From the NCBI RefSeq assembly GCF_006345805.1, contig NW_021835161.1, positions 1-42,207 of the forward strand: a stretch of 42,207 bases of DNA, given 5' to 3'. This document shows, piece by piece, positions 13,604-23,282 of this stretch; within the stretch, counting starts at the first letter, position 1, and each line of letters opens with the position of its first letter. Position numbers and translations under genes: made by a program. Source of the DNA: Octopus sinensis (lineage: Eukaryota). The notes below the pieces were generated by a model. The model worked only from the letters and a program-made list of their open reading frames with translations. It had not been told where the DNA came from and did not search any database.

Positions 13604-14168
13604 GGCGGCGAATTGGCAGAAACGTTAGCACGCCGGGCGAAATGCTTAGCCGTATTTCGTCTGCCGCTACGTTCTGAGTTCAAATTCCGCCGAGCTCGAC
13701 TTTGCCTTTCATCCCTTCGAGATCGATTAAATAAGTACCGGTTACGCTCTGGATTCGATGTAATCGACTTAATCCGTTTGTCTGCCCTTGTTTGTCCGCT
13801 CTGTGTTTAGCCCTTTGTGGGTAGTAAAGAAATAGGTATTTCGTCTGCTGCTACGTTCTGAGTTCAAGTTCCACCGAGGTCGACTTTGCCTTTCATCCTT
13901 TCGGGGTCGATTAAATAAGTACCAGTTACGCACTGGAGTCGATATAATAGACTTAATCCGTTTGTCTGTTCTTGCTTGTCCTCTCTGTGTTTAGCCCCTT
14001 GTGGGTTGTAAAGAAATAGGTATTTCGTCTACTGCTACGTTCTGAGTTCAAATTACACCGAGGTCGACTTTGTCTTTCATACTTTCGGGATCGATAAAAT
14101 GAGTACCAGTTAAAAACTGGGGTCTCCTCCCACCAAATTTCAGGCCTTGAGTCTATAATAGAAAGTAT
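13604..14168 (+). mobile_element. SINE family C composite: head + two 184-bp tail-1 units + terminal tail-2 unit
   Basis: gtatttcgtct recurs at 13652, 13836 and 14020; the first two units end gtaaagaaatag, the last ends in tail 2. Confidence 0.9.
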
Positions 14169-14874
14169 ATTAATGAGGACAAGTTAAAATAAAATTCCTT
14201 GATTCATAAACATTCAATGTTCAAACATGTAAATAAATGACACATGTAAATAGATTATAGAATAGGTGTAAATAGCTTATACCAGATTATCGCGGACAAA
14301 CATACGCGTAAACACCAAAACTGAAACAAAAACAAGATAGAGCAAATAAGAATATAAATAAACATAAATATATATGTACTAAATATATGTGTATATGGGT
14401 GTTTCTACAATTGCACACGAACACACACGCACGCATACACACACACGCACGCATACACACACAGTGTGTGAGAAATTATGACAGAAACCTTATATTTGTT
14501 CCTTACGTACGTCTCATCAGAGTACGTCATTTGTTTTGGATCTTCCAACGAACCACAACAGATCATCAAGTGAAAACTTTATTGCTTTAGATCATTGAGT
14601 TAAACTCTAGCAGCACTACGTACACGCAAGGTAGATAGTAAATATGTGAGTGTGTGAGTGTTGTGTGTGTGTGTGTGTGCGTGCGTGCGTGTATGTGTGT
14701 AATACATGCAAACATACAGTGCTGAGCTGACAAAATTATAACAGTCGATTCACTTAACTCCCCAAACCTTAACGACCGCATCTGAATCCTACAACTTATT
14801 AGGCGTATATGCCTTGTAAAAATAATCTCTGCGCGGTAATTAAATATTGTTTCATTAAAATATTACTTTACAAA

Positions 14875-15085
14875 GAGTAAAGAGCAAAGACTCCCTTGGT
14901 CATGAATGACAATAGGATTCTACCTAGAAAGTTACCCTCCAAGGCACAAATCTGAACACGGTTGATTATAGAAGAACAGCAGTCACCCGTGCTTACCCCC
15001 ACCCAACTCGCCACTGACGTTATCCAAGACAAAGGCAAAGGCCGATGCAACTTGGTATCAGTGACGTCATTTTAGCAGACTAAAA
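14875..15085 (-). mobile_element. SINE family B variant, third tail type, 3' part
   Basis: ggtcatgaatgac..ctagaaagttaccctcc..ttatccaagacaaaggcaaaggccgat; homologous to 25640-25779 (+). Confidence 0.65.
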
Positions 15086-20170: not shown

Positions 20171-20759
20171 GCACCAAATATATTGCTATGGTAAAACCAT
20201 TCAAAATGGAACTCTACAAAGTAAATTGTACGAACTAGAAAAAAAAAAAAAACGTTACAAACTAAGTGAGAAAAGAAAACGGTCTGCCAATCTATGTAGG
20301 TCTAGAAATATAAATCAGTTTATATATAGAAAAACTGAATGCCGAGACAAAACAATAATTATAGGTTTACTGGAGCTTGTGCAGGAGGGAACGTAAATTA
20401 TATTGAGAGAACACCTTTTAATAATATTCATATACTGGAAAAATTATGGCATCATTCTGAAGTATAAACAGAAAAGTGAACGATAGAGACACAATGCATT
20501 ATAAAAGGAATGGGGGAATGACAAAGTGACAATAATTGGGGACATGCCTGTCGTCACAGTAAAATGGAATCGACTCGATATCATTATCATGGACGAGCAT
20601 TTCTCTTAGCTGATGTATTAATCTTAACAAATGCCTATTTATGTCTACGTATGTATGTATATATATATATATACATACATAATTGCATACATACATACAT
20701 AATTGCATAATACATAATACATATTTGCATTCATACATACATACATACATACATCAAGA

Positions 20760-21099
20760 CCGACAGACAAACAAACAGACAAGTAGATAGCAAGATAGAT
20801 AGACAGACAGACAAACAGATAGATATATAGATAGCTAGATAGATAAATAGATAGATAGATAGATAGATAGACAGATAGATAGATAGATAGATAGATATAG
20901 ATAGATAGATAGATAGATAGATAGATAGATAGATAGATAGATAGAGAGATGGTCAGACAGATAGAAAGAAACATAGATAGATAGATAGATAGATAGATAG
21001 ATAGATAGATAGATAGATAGATAGATAGATAGATAGATAGATAGATAGATAGATAGATAGATAGATAGATAGATAGATAGATAGATAGATAGATAGATA
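20760..21099. repeat. (GATA)n tract next to the LINE 3' end
   Basis: Imperfect distally, essentially perfect from about 20975 to 21098. Confidence 0.97.
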
Positions 21100-23282
21100 T
21101 GTTTCTTTATTAGCCACACAGGGCTGCACACAGATAGAATAAATTACAAGGTAGAGCTTTTCTTTTGAAGGTTTAAAAAAAAAAAAAGGAAGGGGGAGTT
21201 TCGATCAAAAGGGATCGTAAAAGGAGAGAAAGAGGACAAAAAAAGGGGGGTTAAAAAAAGGGGGGAGAGGAAAAAAAAAATTTTAAAAAATTGATCAATA
21301 GGGATCGTTATCACAGAAATGTCAATATGAAGTGTAAAGGGGAGGACGGGTGAGGTTTACCCGTGGAAGAAAAGCCTACGGAAAAGACCACGGTAACCTC
21401 GGTCAATGGAGTCACATGTTATATTTCTTTTTTTTTTTTTTGCAAATAAGCAACTCTCTGTTTTCAATTTCTGGGTTCATAGGATCATGCTCAAGGTGGC
21501 TTCGTCATTCATACGTGCCATTCTTGCTACATTCACCCATCTTTTTTTAAAACATTCGCTAGACAAAACTTGCCTCTCTACTCTCACTTTCCTTTTCAAG
21601 TGGTACTTGAAGAAGTTGATGAGAGATTGACCAGAGAGGAAGGTGTTTGTCTCCAATCCTTTCAGACGCGTCCACCAGATACATTCTTTCGCCATAGCCA
21701 CAAGGATGATGAAAATAGCTCTTCCTTCCCGTTTGAAGGAGGGAGGTGTGACAATATTGACGATAGACTCAGCTGATAAACCGACCCGTCCCACGCGTGA
21801 CAGCAGTTGTTCGACACAAGCCCACAGGTCGGAAATTGTTGGACACTGCACGAGTGCGTGCAGAACGGTTTCGTCGCTCTGACCGCATCTCGGGCAGGTC
21901 GGCCCCGTGTTTCTCGAGCCGTGTCTGTAGAGCTTGTCCCGAACGGGTAGCGCTTCTCGGTAGCACTGCCAGGCCAGGGATCTCTGGAAGTTGTCCATGG
22001 GCCCAGGCCCGAAAGTCGTCCTGAACAGGCGGGTCAGGTACTCCTCGTCGACGTCCAGGTTTGCCCCGAGCTCGTCGTCGTACCTCCCCTCCACTAAACC
22101 CCTATAGAATGCTTTGGTTGTGTTGAAGTCACTCAAGGTCGACCCAGGACGGCAGAGTTGCTTGAGAGCAACGCGACACTCGCGGTGCCATTCGCCCTTC
22201 TTCGGCCTCTTTTTGATCCACGACTGCAGTTCGGTGATGGAGACGAGCTGCGGGAAAGCGTGCCTCACAAACGGCGACCACACCTGTTCACCGTCGTCTA
22301 CATAGAGCCAGAGATGTCGCAGTCTCAGCGCGTGTCTGCGCATCATCAACCACGGCATGCCCAGCCCTCCTTTTAACGGGTGTTGACAGCAAATGGATCG
22401 CCTGACCATCGGGACGCATCCTTTCCACAAGAAGCGAAAGAGAATGCGTTGTAGTTTGGTGATGGTAGGGTCGGGACAAGGTACGACGGTCAGGCGGTAG
22501 TAGATGACGGACGCGATGTACGTGTTCGCCACCTCCGCCCGACCTTTTAGGGACAGTTTCCTCTCGGCCCATTGCCGGGCGAGAGTGACCACCCTACTCG
22601 TTATCTCGTTCCAGTTCTTCTCCACTTGGAGGTCCGGACCAAACCAGACCCCGAGCAACTCAACCGGGCCGTCGGTCCAGCGTCCCACGACGGAGGCGCT
22701 GGTGGACGGCATGGTCTTGCTTCTCCAGGTGCCTAGTCGCAAGCCCACTGACTTTTCCCGGTTGATTTTCGCTCCTGTCACCGCTTCGTAGTTTTTCAGT
22801 GTCTCGCCGACCTGCTCGATGTGCTCGTGGCTAGACACTATGACGCTGACGTCGTCCGCGTATGCAGACACGCTGGTCCCGCATCCCAGTTCTCGCGGGA
22901 TGCCTCTCAAGGTTGCCAGCTTCCGCAATAATGGCTCGAGAGTCAATACGTATAGAAGCGACGAGAGGGGGCATCCCTGACGGACCGAACGTGCGATGTC
23001 GAAGGGTCTCGATAGATGTCCATTCACGCGAATTACCGAACGGATGCCTCTGTACAAAGCGGCTATCCAGCCGCGGAAGACGGGACCGAAGCCAGCCGCT
23101 CCGAGGACCGCCTCCAAGTATCGATGGTCCACCCTATCGAAAGCTTTCGATTGATCCAAATTGATCAGCGCCCCACCCATGCCAGGTTCGTTAACTACCC
23201 TGTCTATGATGTAGCGCATCAGGTGGAGGTTGTCATGGATGGTCCGGCCTGGCACGGCGCATGTTTGCGCCCTGTCGACCAG
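21100..23282 (-). mobile_element. 5'-truncated L1/Tx1-clade non-LTR retrotransposon
   Basis: ORF2 fragment plus about 375-nt 3'UTR ending gccctgtgtggctAATAAAgaaac; no poly(A); (GATA)n on both sides; no endonuclease domain or ORF1. Confidence 0.93.
21477..23282 (-). CDS. LINE ORF2 fragment: reverse transcriptase, thumb and C-terminal zinc finger (5'-truncated, no native start)
   Basis: Frame is open to the insertion edge (LVDRAQTCAVPGRTIHDN...). Motifs LDQSKAFDRVDH, SVRQGCPLS, YADD, LSLKGRAEVAN, KGGLG and CPRCGQSDETVLHALVQC; no internal stop or frameshift over about 600 codons. Confidence 0.95.
   Translation of the reverse strand: MVDRAQTCAVPGRTIHDNLHLMRYIIDRVVNEPGMGGALINLDQSKAFDRVDHRYLEAVLGAAGFGPVFRGWIAALYRGIRSVIRVNGHLSRPFDIARSVRQGCPLSSLLYVLTLEPLLRKLATLRGIPRELGCGTSVSAYADDVSVIVSSHEHIEQVGETLKNYEAVTGAKINREKSVGLRLGTWRSKTMPSTSASVVGRWTDGPVELLGVWFGPDLQVEKNWNEITSRVVTLARQWAERKLSLKGRAEVANTYIASVIYYRLTVVPCPDPTITKLQRILFRFLWKGCVPMVRRSICCQHPLKGGLGMPWLMMRRHALRLRHLWLYVDDGEQVWSPFVRHAFPQLVSITELQSWIKKRPKKGEWHRECRVALKQLCRPGSTLSDFNTTKAFYRGLVEGRYDDELGANLDVDEEYLTRLFRTTFGPGPMDNFQRSLAWQCYREALPVRDKLYRHGSRNTGPTCPRCGQSDETVLHALVQCPTISDLWACVEQLLSRVGRVGLSAESIVNIVTPPSFKREGRAIFIILVAMAKECIWWTRLKGLETNTFLSGQSLINFFKYHLKRKVRVERQVLSSECFKKRWVNVARMARMNDEATLSMIL

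What the first reader, a model, noticed from the sequence alone, without database searches (positions are those of the whole stretch)
13800..21134. SINE-C tail 1 is the 3' end of the Tx1-like LINE: partner pair visible in one window
Seen: LINE terminus (reverse complement of 21102-21134) tctgtgtgcagccctgtgtggctaataaagaaa vs SINE 13800-13832 tctgtgtttagccctttgtgggtagtaaagaaa is 28/33 ungapped; vs reverse complement of 35171-35203 it is 27/33. A hairpin is kept despite sequence change (AGCC-ctgtgt-GGCT, GCCC-tttgt-GGGC, GCCC-tttgt-GGGT), directly before AATAAA or AGTAAA. Established: stringent LINEs recognise a 3' stem-loop shared with partner SINEs, whereas mammalian L1 recognises only poly(A). 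Inference: stringent-type recognition by an L1/Tx1-clade lineage, which I believe is rarely documented.
Basis: partly seen in the sequence, partly recalled or inferred. Interest (0 to 1): 0.75.

Follow-up and report, generated by a model that had tools for sequence, protein, structure and literature searches.

The report
Octopus SINE borrows its LINE's tail
A short mobile element (SINE) in this octopus-type genome ends in the same roughly 35-50 base hairpin tail as an L1-like LINE in the same window, a standard parasite-and-helper pairing that is seldom reported for the L1 group.

Summary
The last 33 nt of a 5'-truncated LINE (21101-23282, minus strand) match SINE "tail 1" at 28/33 and 27/33. 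A pattern scan found five copies of the motif in the window against 0 expected.

- **LINE terminus.** The same module ends independent LINE copies from other octopods (Argonauta hians, metagenome and SRA contigs), while the rest of the 3' UTR has diverged.
- **SINE terminus.** It ends SINEs flush against target-site duplications, with no poly(A).
- **Co-evolution.** Argonauta SINEs carry the Argonauta LINE version of the module.
- **Structure.** A 4-bp G/C stem with a YUUGU loop is paired in 90% of cells across 24 tails (49% or less in slid controls). One pair occurs as G-C, C-G and A-U.
- **Extent.** With some LINE subfamilies the homology runs about 47-55 nt.
- **3' ends.** Tails are followed by (ATT)n or (CTAT)n repeats, a trait of stringent-type LINEs.

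Corrections:
- 13800-13832 is not a terminal tail. It lies inside a composite SINE that moved as one unit on a different tail ("tail 2"). The true terminal example is 35170-35399.
- The LINE belongs to the L1 group (zf-RVT here, APE in relatives, colinear with human ORF2p). Tx1 placement is inferred, not tested by phylogeny.

Verdict: a new member of a known kind. L1-group tail sharing is rare but documented.

The parts
21101..23282 (-). 5'-truncated L1-group LINE copy: RT, C-terminal zinc-binding domain and 3' UTR. It ends ...GGCTAATAAAGAAAC with no poly(A).
   Evidence: The closest relatives are octopod LINE ORF2 fragments (64-81% aa identity).
21477..23255 (-). Uninterrupted 592-aa remnant of ORF2 (RVT_1 and zf-RVT).
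   Evidence: The best PDB match is human L1 ORF2p at 2.4e-21, against R2 at 1.7e-12.
21102..21156 (-). LINE 3' tail module shared with the SINE: 33 nt ungapped (21102-21134), about 55 nt with gaps. Hairpin AGCC/CUGUGU/GGCU.
20784..21099 (.). (CTAT)n array (reading the LINE strand) directly after the LINE 3' end. It is either the LINE's own 3' repeat tail or the microsatellite it inserted into.
   Evidence: Nearly all Argonauta tails end GAAATCTAT.
23283..23440 (.). (CTAT)n array directly upstream of the truncated LINE 5' end.
35170..35399 (-). Simple SINE copy (tRNA-like head, conserved core, terminal tail 1). This is the real 'partner' example. It is flanked by the target-site duplication AAGTACTGCTTATAA (35400-35414) and AAGTAATGCTTAATAA (35154-35169).
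35171..35223 (-). LINE-derived tail 1 of that SINE (GCCC/UUUGU/GGGC hairpin, then AAUAAAGAAAU).
13600..14165 (+). Composite SINE, in order: head, core, tail 1; then core, tail 1; then short core, tail 2. The target-site duplication TACATTAATAAGGACAA (13583-13599) and TATATTAATGAGGACAA (14166-14182) encloses the whole composite.
13800..13832 (+). A second internal module lies at 13984-14016.
36386..36757 (+). Second composite SINE, in order: head, core, tail 1 (36579-36611); then short core, tail 2. It has the same junction, gaaatag|gtatttcgtc, as the first.
40717..40865 (-). Second, heavily 5'-truncated LINE 3' UTR fragment of the L003-like subfamily: ...gtcAGCCcttgtGGCCaataaaagaatt, followed by (ATT)n at 40556-40715.
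25783..25993 (+). Example of the same SINE body carrying tail 2 (...cccccaaaatttcGGGCcttgtGCCTagagtagaaaagaat). Other tail-2 copies lie near 12115-12338(-), 41331-41498(-), 40325-40530(-), 41520-41715(-), 41075-41270(-) and 19290-19512(-).
   Evidence: The 12115-12338 copy has an exact 16-bp target-site duplication.

Best explanation
The window comes from an octopod cephalopod genome. An L1-group LINE family (probably what octopus repeat annotations call L1-Tx1) ends in a conserved module of about 35-55 nt. The module has three parts. The first is a U-rich stretch (UUCUGUGU). The second is a 4-bp G/C stem closing a (C/U)UUGU loop. The third is AAUAAAGAAAU, followed by a short repeat, (AUU)n or (CUAU)n, instead of poly(A).

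A SINE with a tRNA-like head and a conserved core has acquired this module as its 3' tail ('tail 1'). The most likely mechanism is the classical stringent-type partnership. The LINE's ORF2 protein recognises the terminal stem-loop on RNA. It starts target-primed reverse transcription at the GAAAU/repeat end. It therefore also copies SINE RNA that carries the same tail, producing insertions with 13-17-bp target-site duplications and no A-tail.

Shown here: the homology, its terminal position in both elements, its conservation across LINE copies and species, stem covariation, absence of poly(A), and the duplications. Inferred: binding by ORF2p, trans-mobilisation, and the role of the repeats in priming.
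For: 1. The match is real: 28/33 and 27/33, with 5 motif sites against 0 expected.

2. It is terminal in LINEs. Independent LINE copies end in the module:
- L003: GGCC cttgt GGCC aataaaagaaatc(att)n.
- Argonauta L002:6626 and 6261.
- Argonauta L028:11166 and 4825.
- Window, about 40717.
- Logan L029-32: AACC cttgt GGTT.

3. It is terminal in SINEs. SINE 35170-35399 has a 15-16-bp target-site duplication right after ...AATAAAGAAAT. Argonauta SINE L002:7643 has a 13-bp duplication.

4. The tail is the best-conserved part of the UTR, 53-82% against 26-56% identity.

5. SINE-to-LINE homology extends to 47-55 nt. For example, GTCCCCTCTATGTTT is identical in the window SINE and Argonauta LINE L028:11166. 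All Smith-Waterman scores beat 300 shuffles.

6. The structure is supported. 89.6% of cells are paired against 49% or less when slid. One pair shows GC 16, CG 4, AU 2. 0 of 500 shuffles reach the covariation score (smaller set). The MFE contains the hairpin in 21 of 26 tails.

7. Argonauta SINE tails carry the Argonauta LINE stem type (GGCC/GGCT), while the window SINEs carry GCCC/GGGY.

8. L1-group identity is supported. zf-RVT is present. A full-length relative, P0024, is colinear with human L1 ORF2p over residues 8-857 (E 2.5e-74, against R2 at 1.4e-17). The APE domain hits L1-EN structures and not R1 or TRAS1 EN. ORF1 of a relative has a CCHC knuckle, described as consistent with Tx1 (PMC5203782). 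Octopus annotations list L1-Tx1 as the only L1-like LINE class (PMC13282606; PMC8967140).
Against: - The stem is only 4 bp. The four C-G cells come from one SINE lineage, so independent compensatory events number about 2-3.
- The window LINE forms its stem only in a register shifted by one base with a 6-nt loop. In the SINE register it has a C-C mismatch.
- z-scores of single tails are modest, -0.2 to -3.3.
- Three of the four tail-1 modules in the window are internal to composites that moved on tail 2. The window therefore gives a single direct example of tail-1-driven insertion.
- AAUAAA could be conserved as a polyadenylation signal rather than for RT recognition.
- No phylogeny with reference Tx1 or L1 sequences was possible. 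No octopus genome or repeat library was available to rule out a better-matching LINE of another clade.
- Concurrent activity of the LINE and the SINE was not assessed.
Confidence: 0.8

Rival explanations
1. The shared module is conserved for 3'-end formation of transcripts (the AAUAAA polyadenylation signal plus an upstream element) or as plain primary sequence. It is not a stem-loop read by the reverse transcriptase, and the hairpin is incidental.
For: AATAAA is nearly invariant in LINE tails. The stem is short. The lower helix is simply U-rich against A-rich sequence. Single-sequence z-scores are weak.
Against: - Pol III SINE transcripts do not need AAUAAA, yet they keep the module.
- SINE tails tolerate AGTAAA, TGTAAA, AACAGA and AATAGA while keeping the stem paired.
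- Compensatory G-C, C-G and A-U changes are not expected without a structural constraint.
- No LINE or SINE end seen carries poly(A), and all of them end at the same GAAAT.
Confidence: 0.12
2. Tail 1 is only a relic in this SINE family. The SINE is really moved through tail 2, or by another LINE, and its resemblance to this LINE reflects a past capture with no present partnership.
For: Three of the four tail-1 modules in the window are internal to composites whose target-site duplication encloses the whole unit and whose 3' end is tail 2. Seven further copies carry tail 2 only.
Against: SINE 35170-35399 ends exactly at tail 1 and is flanked by a 15-16-bp target-site duplication. More than ten Argonauta SINE copies in 30 kb end in the module, one with a clear duplication. 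Argonauta SINE tails track the Argonauta LINE stem variant, which implies continued co-evolution.
Confidence: 0.06
3. Relaxed, mammalian-L1-like mobilisation: the LINE recognises an A-rich or poly(A) 3' end, and the shared 33 nt are irrelevant to it.
For: The LINE is L1-like, and the tail ends in an A-rich stretch, AAUAAAGAAA.
Against: No copy has a poly(A) tail. Ends are followed by (ATT)n, (CTAT)n or directly by the target-site duplication. The conserved terminal module and its covariation would go unexplained.
Confidence: 0.02

Closest known systems
UnaL2 / UnaSINE1 of the eel and ZfL2-1/-2 of zebrafish (L2 clade; Kajikawa & Okada 2002; Hayashi et al. 2014, PMC4176376)
   Same: LINE and SINE share a 3' tail containing a conserved stem-loop. 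The 3' end carries short repeats rather than poly(A). This is the reference model of stringent recognition, which the data here fit.
   Different: The LINE clade differs (L2, not the L1 group). The eel and zebrafish stem-loops, as I recall them, are longer and are experimentally proven to be required. Here the stem is 4 bp, possibly with a lower A-U helix, and nothing has been tested at the bench.
L1-clade stringent pairs: maize LINE1-1_ZM with ZmSINE2/3, and Chlamydomonas L1-1_CR with SINEX-3_CR (Ohshima 2012, PMC3472496)
   Same: L1-clade LINEs share a conserved 3' end with SINEs, about 50 nt in maize and about 80 nt in Chlamydomonas. The maize and sorghum elements have a hairpin with compensatory changes. 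[quoted passage not shown]
   Different: Those cases are in plants and green algae, and L1-1_CR and SINEX-3_CR end in poly(A). This case is in an animal (a cephalopod), lacks poly(A), ends in (ATT)n or (CTAT)n, and probably belongs to the Tx1 branch.
SINEU / Tx1-Mar of crocodilians (Kojima 2015, PMC4494074)
   Same: A SINE family inferred to be mobilised by LINEs of the Tx1 clade.
   Different: That link rests on a shared insertion target (Mariner-N4_AMi) and shared snRNA heads. SINEU ends in poly(A), and no tail similarity to any LINE was found. Here the link is a shared tail, and no common insertion target was seen.
Human L1 / Alu (relaxed type)
   Same: The LINE architecture is L1-like: relative P0024 is colinear with human ORF2p over residues 8-857. 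Target-site duplications of 13-17 bp are typical of APE-type target-primed reverse transcription.
   Different: There is no poly(A) on the LINE or the SINE, and the two share a specific terminal module. ORF1 in a relative is the CCHC type, not Transposase_22.

Membership tests
LINE-SINE partner pair with a shared 3' tail (stringent type) | The 3' end of the SINE is homologous to the 3' end of the LINE | tested here: met
   28/33 and 27/33 ungapped. Homology of 47-55 nt with gaps, beating 300 shuffles for every informative LINE copy.
LINE-SINE partner pair with a shared 3' tail (stringent type) | The shared segment is the extreme 3' terminus of both elements | tested here: met
   LINE copies end with the module. 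SINE 35170-35399 and Argonauta SINE L002:7643 are followed directly by target-site duplications. The 13800, 13984 and 36579 modules are internal.
LINE-SINE partner pair with a shared 3' tail (stringent type) | A conserved stem-loop in the tail supported by compensatory changes | tested here: met
   89.6% of cells paired against 49% or less when slid. One pair shows GC, CG and AU. 0 of 500 shuffles reach the score. The stem is only 4 bp, and independent events are few.
LINE-SINE partner pair with a shared 3' tail (stringent type) | The 3' end carries short repeats rather than poly(A) | tested here: met
   (ATT)n follows four L003-like LINE tails. The window LINE is followed by (CTAT)n, and Argonauta tails end in CTAT. 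No poly(A) was seen anywhere.
LINE-SINE partner pair with a shared 3' tail (stringent type) | Retrotransposition depends on the tail, and the SINE is mobilised in trans | not testable with these tools
   This requires a retrotransposition assay.
L1 group (L1 / Tx1 clades) | ORF2 with an N-terminal APE endonuclease, an RT and a C-terminal Cys-rich domain, most similar to L1 ORF2p | tested here: met
   The window copy has RVT_1 and zf-RVT; its APE region is lost by 5' truncation. Relatives P0024, P0038 and L012 have Exo_endo_phos and RVT_1. P0024 aligns colinearly with human ORF2p at E 2.5e-74. The APE hits L1-EN structures.
Tx1 clade specifically | The RT phylogeny groups the element with reference Tx1 elements (RTclass1 / Repbase) | not tested
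   No reference Tx1 sequences were available. Indirect support: a CCHC-type ORF1 in the 45%-identical relative L011, and octopus annotations that list only L1-Tx1 among L1-like LINEs.
Tx1 clade specifically | Sequence-specific insertion target, typical of many Tx1 families | tested here: inconclusive
   The window LINE sits inside (CTAT)n, and Argonauta targets often begin with CTAT. The SINE duplications differ from one another, and no common target was seen. The sample is too small.
tRNA-derived SINE | A head recognisable as a tRNA, with A and B boxes | tested here: inconclusive
   A B-box-like GAGTTCAAATTCC is present. ARAGORN and the Rfam gathering thresholds call no tRNA in the window. 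Octopus SINEs are annotated tRNA-Deu or tRNA-Core in the literature.
Relaxed L1-type mobilisation | LINE and SINE both end in poly(A) | tested here: not met
   None of the LINE or SINE ends examined has poly(A).

The most novel reading that the evidence does not exclude
Octopod L1/Tx1-group LINEs may be stringent-type elements that read a minimal 4-bp stem with a YUUGU loop, with the identity of the stem pairs discriminating between LINE subfamilies.

One SINE body swaps between such tails. Tail 1 is GCCC/GGGY. Tail 2 is GGGC/GCCY, with two stem pairs flipped and the same loop, and it resembles the UTR of a 45%-identical LINE family.

The composite arrays (head, core, tail 1, core, tail 2) would then be tail exchange caught in the act, by template switching of the reverse transcriptase. 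That mechanism could underlie the octopus-specific SINE expansion.
Probability: 0.3. Interest if true: 0.65.

Novelty: new member of a known kind. Interest (0 to 1): 0.45.

Why it matters
SINEs make up roughly a tenth of octopus genomes, and most families there are unclassified with no named LINE partner (PMC13282606). Tying one abundant SINE body to an L1-group LINE through a shared, covarying hairpin tail names the likely engine of part of that expansion.

It would also add an animal example to the very short list of L1-clade LINEs that appear to use stringent 3'-end recognition. The three cases found by 2012 were all in plants or algae. This bears on Ohshima's proposal that stringent recognition was ancestral in the L1 clade and was relaxed independently in mammals and flowering plants.

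The hairpin is small and comes with natural stem variants, so the question is directly testable with compensatory mutants.

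Tried and rejected
- **Metagenome scans for more LINE copies**. The single-protein query found nothing. The alignment query found only four unrelated or weak loci (L004-L007).
- **Exact-pattern scans for the tail** in GTDB genomes and IMG/VR. These gave 13 and 1 hits, all in bacterial or viral contigs, about the number I estimated for chance matches, so they were set aside.
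- **Contigs that stop short of the tail.** L001, L008, L010 and L027 (the last 81% identical to the window LINE) end before or just at the tail. L009 has a degenerate end.
- **Direct link between tail 2 and LINE family B** (L011, L012). BLAST is not significant. Smith-Waterman gives 26/31 with p < 0.005 for two copies only, so this is kept as a lead.
- **Chance similarity** is rejected.
- **A SINE fragment merely lying next to the LINE** is rejected, because independent LINE copies with colinear UTRs end in the same module.
- **Rfam gathering scan** of the window and three loci found only a 5S rRNA in L012. ARAGORN found no tRNA.
- **Species behind the accessions** could not be found in the literature, except that GCA_054771915 appears in one cephalopod genome paper; its proteins are labelled Argonauta hians.
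- **Third homologue search** was not spent on naming the clade. The listing shows only the 120 best hits, and nearly all of those in the first search were unnamed ENA sequences.

Full report
**1. Observation**

- The reverse complement of 21102-21134 (TCTGTGTGCAGCCCTGTGTGGCTAATAAAGAAA) matches 13800-13832 at 28/33 and the reverse complement of 35171-35203 at 27/33, both ungapped.
- BLASTN of the SINE against the 42-kb window recovers the 33-mer at E = 5e-5.
- A degenerate pattern allowing 3 mismatches finds five sites (13800, 13984, 36579, 35171 and 21102). None appears in 100 dinucleotide-preserving shuffles.

This is not chance.

**2. What lies at 21102-21134**

It is the 3' end of a LINE.
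- On the minus strand an uninterrupted 592-aa frame (21477-23255) carries RVT_1 (5e-21) and zf-RVT (8e-8).
- A 376-nt UTR follows and ends ...GGCTAATAAAGAAAC at 21101.
- The copy is 5'-truncated at 23282.
- (CTAT)n arrays lie directly on both sides, at 23283-23440 and 20784-21099.

**3. Which LINE**

The closest proteins are octopod:
- Argonauta hians: P0004 (64%) and P0123.
- An NCBI assembly contig: P0001 (71%).
- ENA and JGI contigs (72-81%).

Evidence for the L1 group:
- The window fragment matches human L1 ORF2p best among solved structures (2.4e-21, against R2 at 1.7e-12).
- A full-length relative, P0024, is colinear with human ORF2p over residues 8-857 (2.5e-74, against 1.4e-17 for R2).
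- Relatives have an N-terminal APE domain. That domain hits L1-EN structures but not R1 or TRAS1 endonucleases.
- ORF1 of a 45%-identical relative (L011) has a CCHC knuckle. This is a Type I ORF1p, described as consistent with the Tx1 clade in animals (PMC5203782).
- Octopus repeat annotations list L1-Tx1 as the only L1-like LINE class (PMC13282606; PMC8967140).

The element is therefore an L1-group LINE and probably Tx1. I could not run a phylogeny against reference Tx1 sequences.

**4. The motif in other LINE copies**

The motif is present at the termini of the other LINE copies.

| Copy | Terminal sequence |
|---|---|
| L003 (72% aa identity) | ccgGGCCcttgtGGCCaataaaagaaatc(att)n |
| Argonauta L002:6626 | tctgtgtcGGCCcttgtGGCTaataaagaaatctat |
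| Argonauta L002:6261 | tctgtgtcAGCCaggtGGCTaagaaagaaat |
| Argonauta L028:11166 | TGCCcttgtGGCTaataaaagaaat, then ATT repeats |
| Argonauta L028:4825 | GACCcttgtGGTCaataaaagaatt(att)n |
| Logan L029-L032 | AACCcttgtGGTTtgaataaa (contig end) |
| Window, about 40717-40865 (minus) | AGCCcttgtGGCCaataaaagaatt, then (ATT)n at 40556-40715 |

In a MAFFT alignment of five UTRs, pairwise comparison of four of them (L009's degenerate end left out) gives 53-82% identity over the last 34 nt against 26-56% for the UTR bodies.

**5. The SINE side, and a correction**

The window holds about ten copies of one SINE body, a tRNA-like head followed by a conserved core. Only one is a simple element that ends in tail 1. 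That copy is 35170-35399 (minus). It ends ...GGGCAATAAAGAAAT and is flanked by a 15-16-bp target-site duplication, AAGTACTGCTTATAA and AAGTAATGCTTAATAA.

Two composites have the following layouts:

| Composite | Order of segments |
|---|---|
| 13600-14165 | head, core, tail 1; core, tail 1; short core, tail 2 |
| 36386-36757 | head, core, tail 1; short core, tail 2 |

Both composites share the junction gaaatag|gtatttcgtc. The first is enclosed as a whole by a 17-bp target-site duplication with 2 mismatches. It therefore moved as one unit on tail 2.

Seven more copies carry tail 2 only. One of them has an exact 16-bp target-site duplication.

Argonauta gives independent support. More than ten SINE copies in 30 kb end in GGCCcttgtGGCTaatagagaaatctat. 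One is flanked by a 13-bp duplication. Their stem is the Argonauta LINE type (GGCC/GGCT), whereas the window SINEs have GCCC/GGGY.

**6. Extent of homology**

Local alignment with shuffling shows that the LINE-derived part of the SINE is longer than 33 nt. The best case pairs window SINE 35170-35399 with Argonauta LINE L028:11166:
- SINE: TGT-TTGTCCCCTCTATGTTTAGCCCTTTGTGGGCAAT-AAAGAAAT
- LINE: TGTATCGTCCCCTCTATGTTTTTGCCCTTGTGGCTAATAAAAGAAAT

Every informative comparison beats 300 shuffles.

**7. Structure**

I chose 24 tails by the loop and the A-rich 3' flank, not by pairing. On that set:
- The 4-bp stem is paired in 89.6% of cells, against 6-49% when the 3' partner is slid by 1-3 columns.
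- The second pair occurs as G-C (16), C-G (4) and A-U (2).
- The outer pair occurs as G-U, G-C and A-U.
- 0 of 500 shuffles reach the covariation score.

A smaller set gave the same picture.

ViennaRNA places the hairpin in the MFE of 21 of 26 tails. In 21 of 26 the fold has seven or more pairs, in most cases through a lower helix between UUCUGUGU and AAUAAAGAA.

Caveats:
- The stem is short.
- The four C-G cells come from one SINE lineage.
- The window LINE needs a one-base register shift (AGCC/CUGUGU/GGCU), because it has a C-C mismatch in the SINE register.
- Single-sequence z-scores are modest.

**8. 3' ends**

No LINE or SINE end has poly(A).
- All four L003-like LINE tails are followed by (ATT)n.
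- Argonauta tails nearly all end GAAATCTAT.
- The window LINE ends GAAAC-ATAT-(CTAT)n.

This looks like the repeat tails of stringent LINEs such as UnaL2 (TGTAA)n and the I element (TAA)n (PMC3747384). Whether the upstream (CTAT)n means the LINE targets that microsatellite is open.

**9. Comparison with what is known**

Tail sharing between a LINE and a SINE is the classical stringent model. For the L1 clade it is rare. [quoted passage not shown]

For Tx1, Kojima 2015 linked SINEU to Tx1-Mar by shared target and shared heads. SINEU has poly(A) and no tail similarity to any LINE.

My searches of the held literature found no paper naming a LINE partner for octopus SINEs. Standard repeat classes do include SINEs with L1-type tails, for example 'U-L1' in the O. 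vulgaris table.

I therefore rate this as a new member of a known kind: a well-supported example of moderate interest.

**10. Lead not settled: tail 2**

Tail 2 (...cccccaaaatttcGGGCcttgtGCCTagagtagaaaagaat, often followed by ATT repeats) has the same architecture as tail 1. Two stem pairs are flipped and the loop is the same. It resembles a motif in the UTR of LINE family B (L012: cccctcccccatttttcGGCCttgtGCC; 26/31, p < 0.005 for two copies).

If this holds, one SINE body uses tails from two related LINE families, and the composites record tail exchange.

Noticed in passing
window 13600-14165 and 36386-36757: Two composite SINEs share an identical internal junction (gaaatag|gtatttcgtc, at SINE position about 57). 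Their layout is head, core and tail 1, repeated once or twice from the core onward, then a short core and tail 2. The first is enclosed by one 17-bp target-site duplication, so it moved as a unit. Possible origins are RT template switching between SINE RNAs, or nested insertion in a master copy.
   Followed up: partly
window 12115-12338(-), 25783-25993(+), 40325-40530(-), 41075-41270(-), 41331-41498(-), 41520-41715(-), 19290-19512(-): The same SINE body carries a second tail (C-rich run, aaatttc, GGGC cttgt GCCY, agagtagaaaagaat, often followed by ATT repeats). Relative to tail 1, two stem pairs are flipped and the loop is the same. It weakly resembles the 3' UTR of a 45%-identical LINE family (L012 8726-8755).
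   Followed up: partly
window 40717-40865(-) with 40556-40715: A second, heavily truncated LINE 3' UTR fragment of the L003-like subfamily ends in AGCC cttgt GGCC aataaaagaatt and is followed by about 53 ATT repeats.
   Followed up: yes
window 20784-21099 and 23283-23440: The LINE fragment is embedded in (CTAT)n on both sides, and Argonauta relatives end in GAAATCTAT. Either the array grew from the element's own terminal CTAT unit, or the element prefers (CTAT)n targets through annealing of its 3' end. LINE tails may seed or extend microsatellites in this very repeat-rich window (100 TRF rows).
   Followed up: partly
L011 348-16180: Full-length copies of the related LINE family B lie head to tail with a period of about 7.5 kb (ORF1 starts at 348 and 7895). 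Such tandem arrays suggest site-specific or self-targeted insertion.
   Followed up: no
L012 10379-10499(-): A 5S rRNA gene (Rfam, 44 bits) lies about 2.3 kb downstream of the family B LINE ORF. Some Tx1-clade elements are, from memory, reported to target 5S genes, but adjacency was not shown here.
   Followed up: no
protein P0005: A protein annotated as coming from a 'MAG: Herbaspirillum sp.' is 63% identical to this cephalopod LINE ORF2. This is probably host-DNA contamination of a bacterial bin.
   Followed up: no
window 35000-35066(-): A different tRNA-like SINE head (ggcatgtggcgtagtagttaagagcctgggc...gagttcgattcc) lies just downstream of a (CA)n run next to the tail-1 SINE. It belongs to another SINE family.
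   Followed up: no
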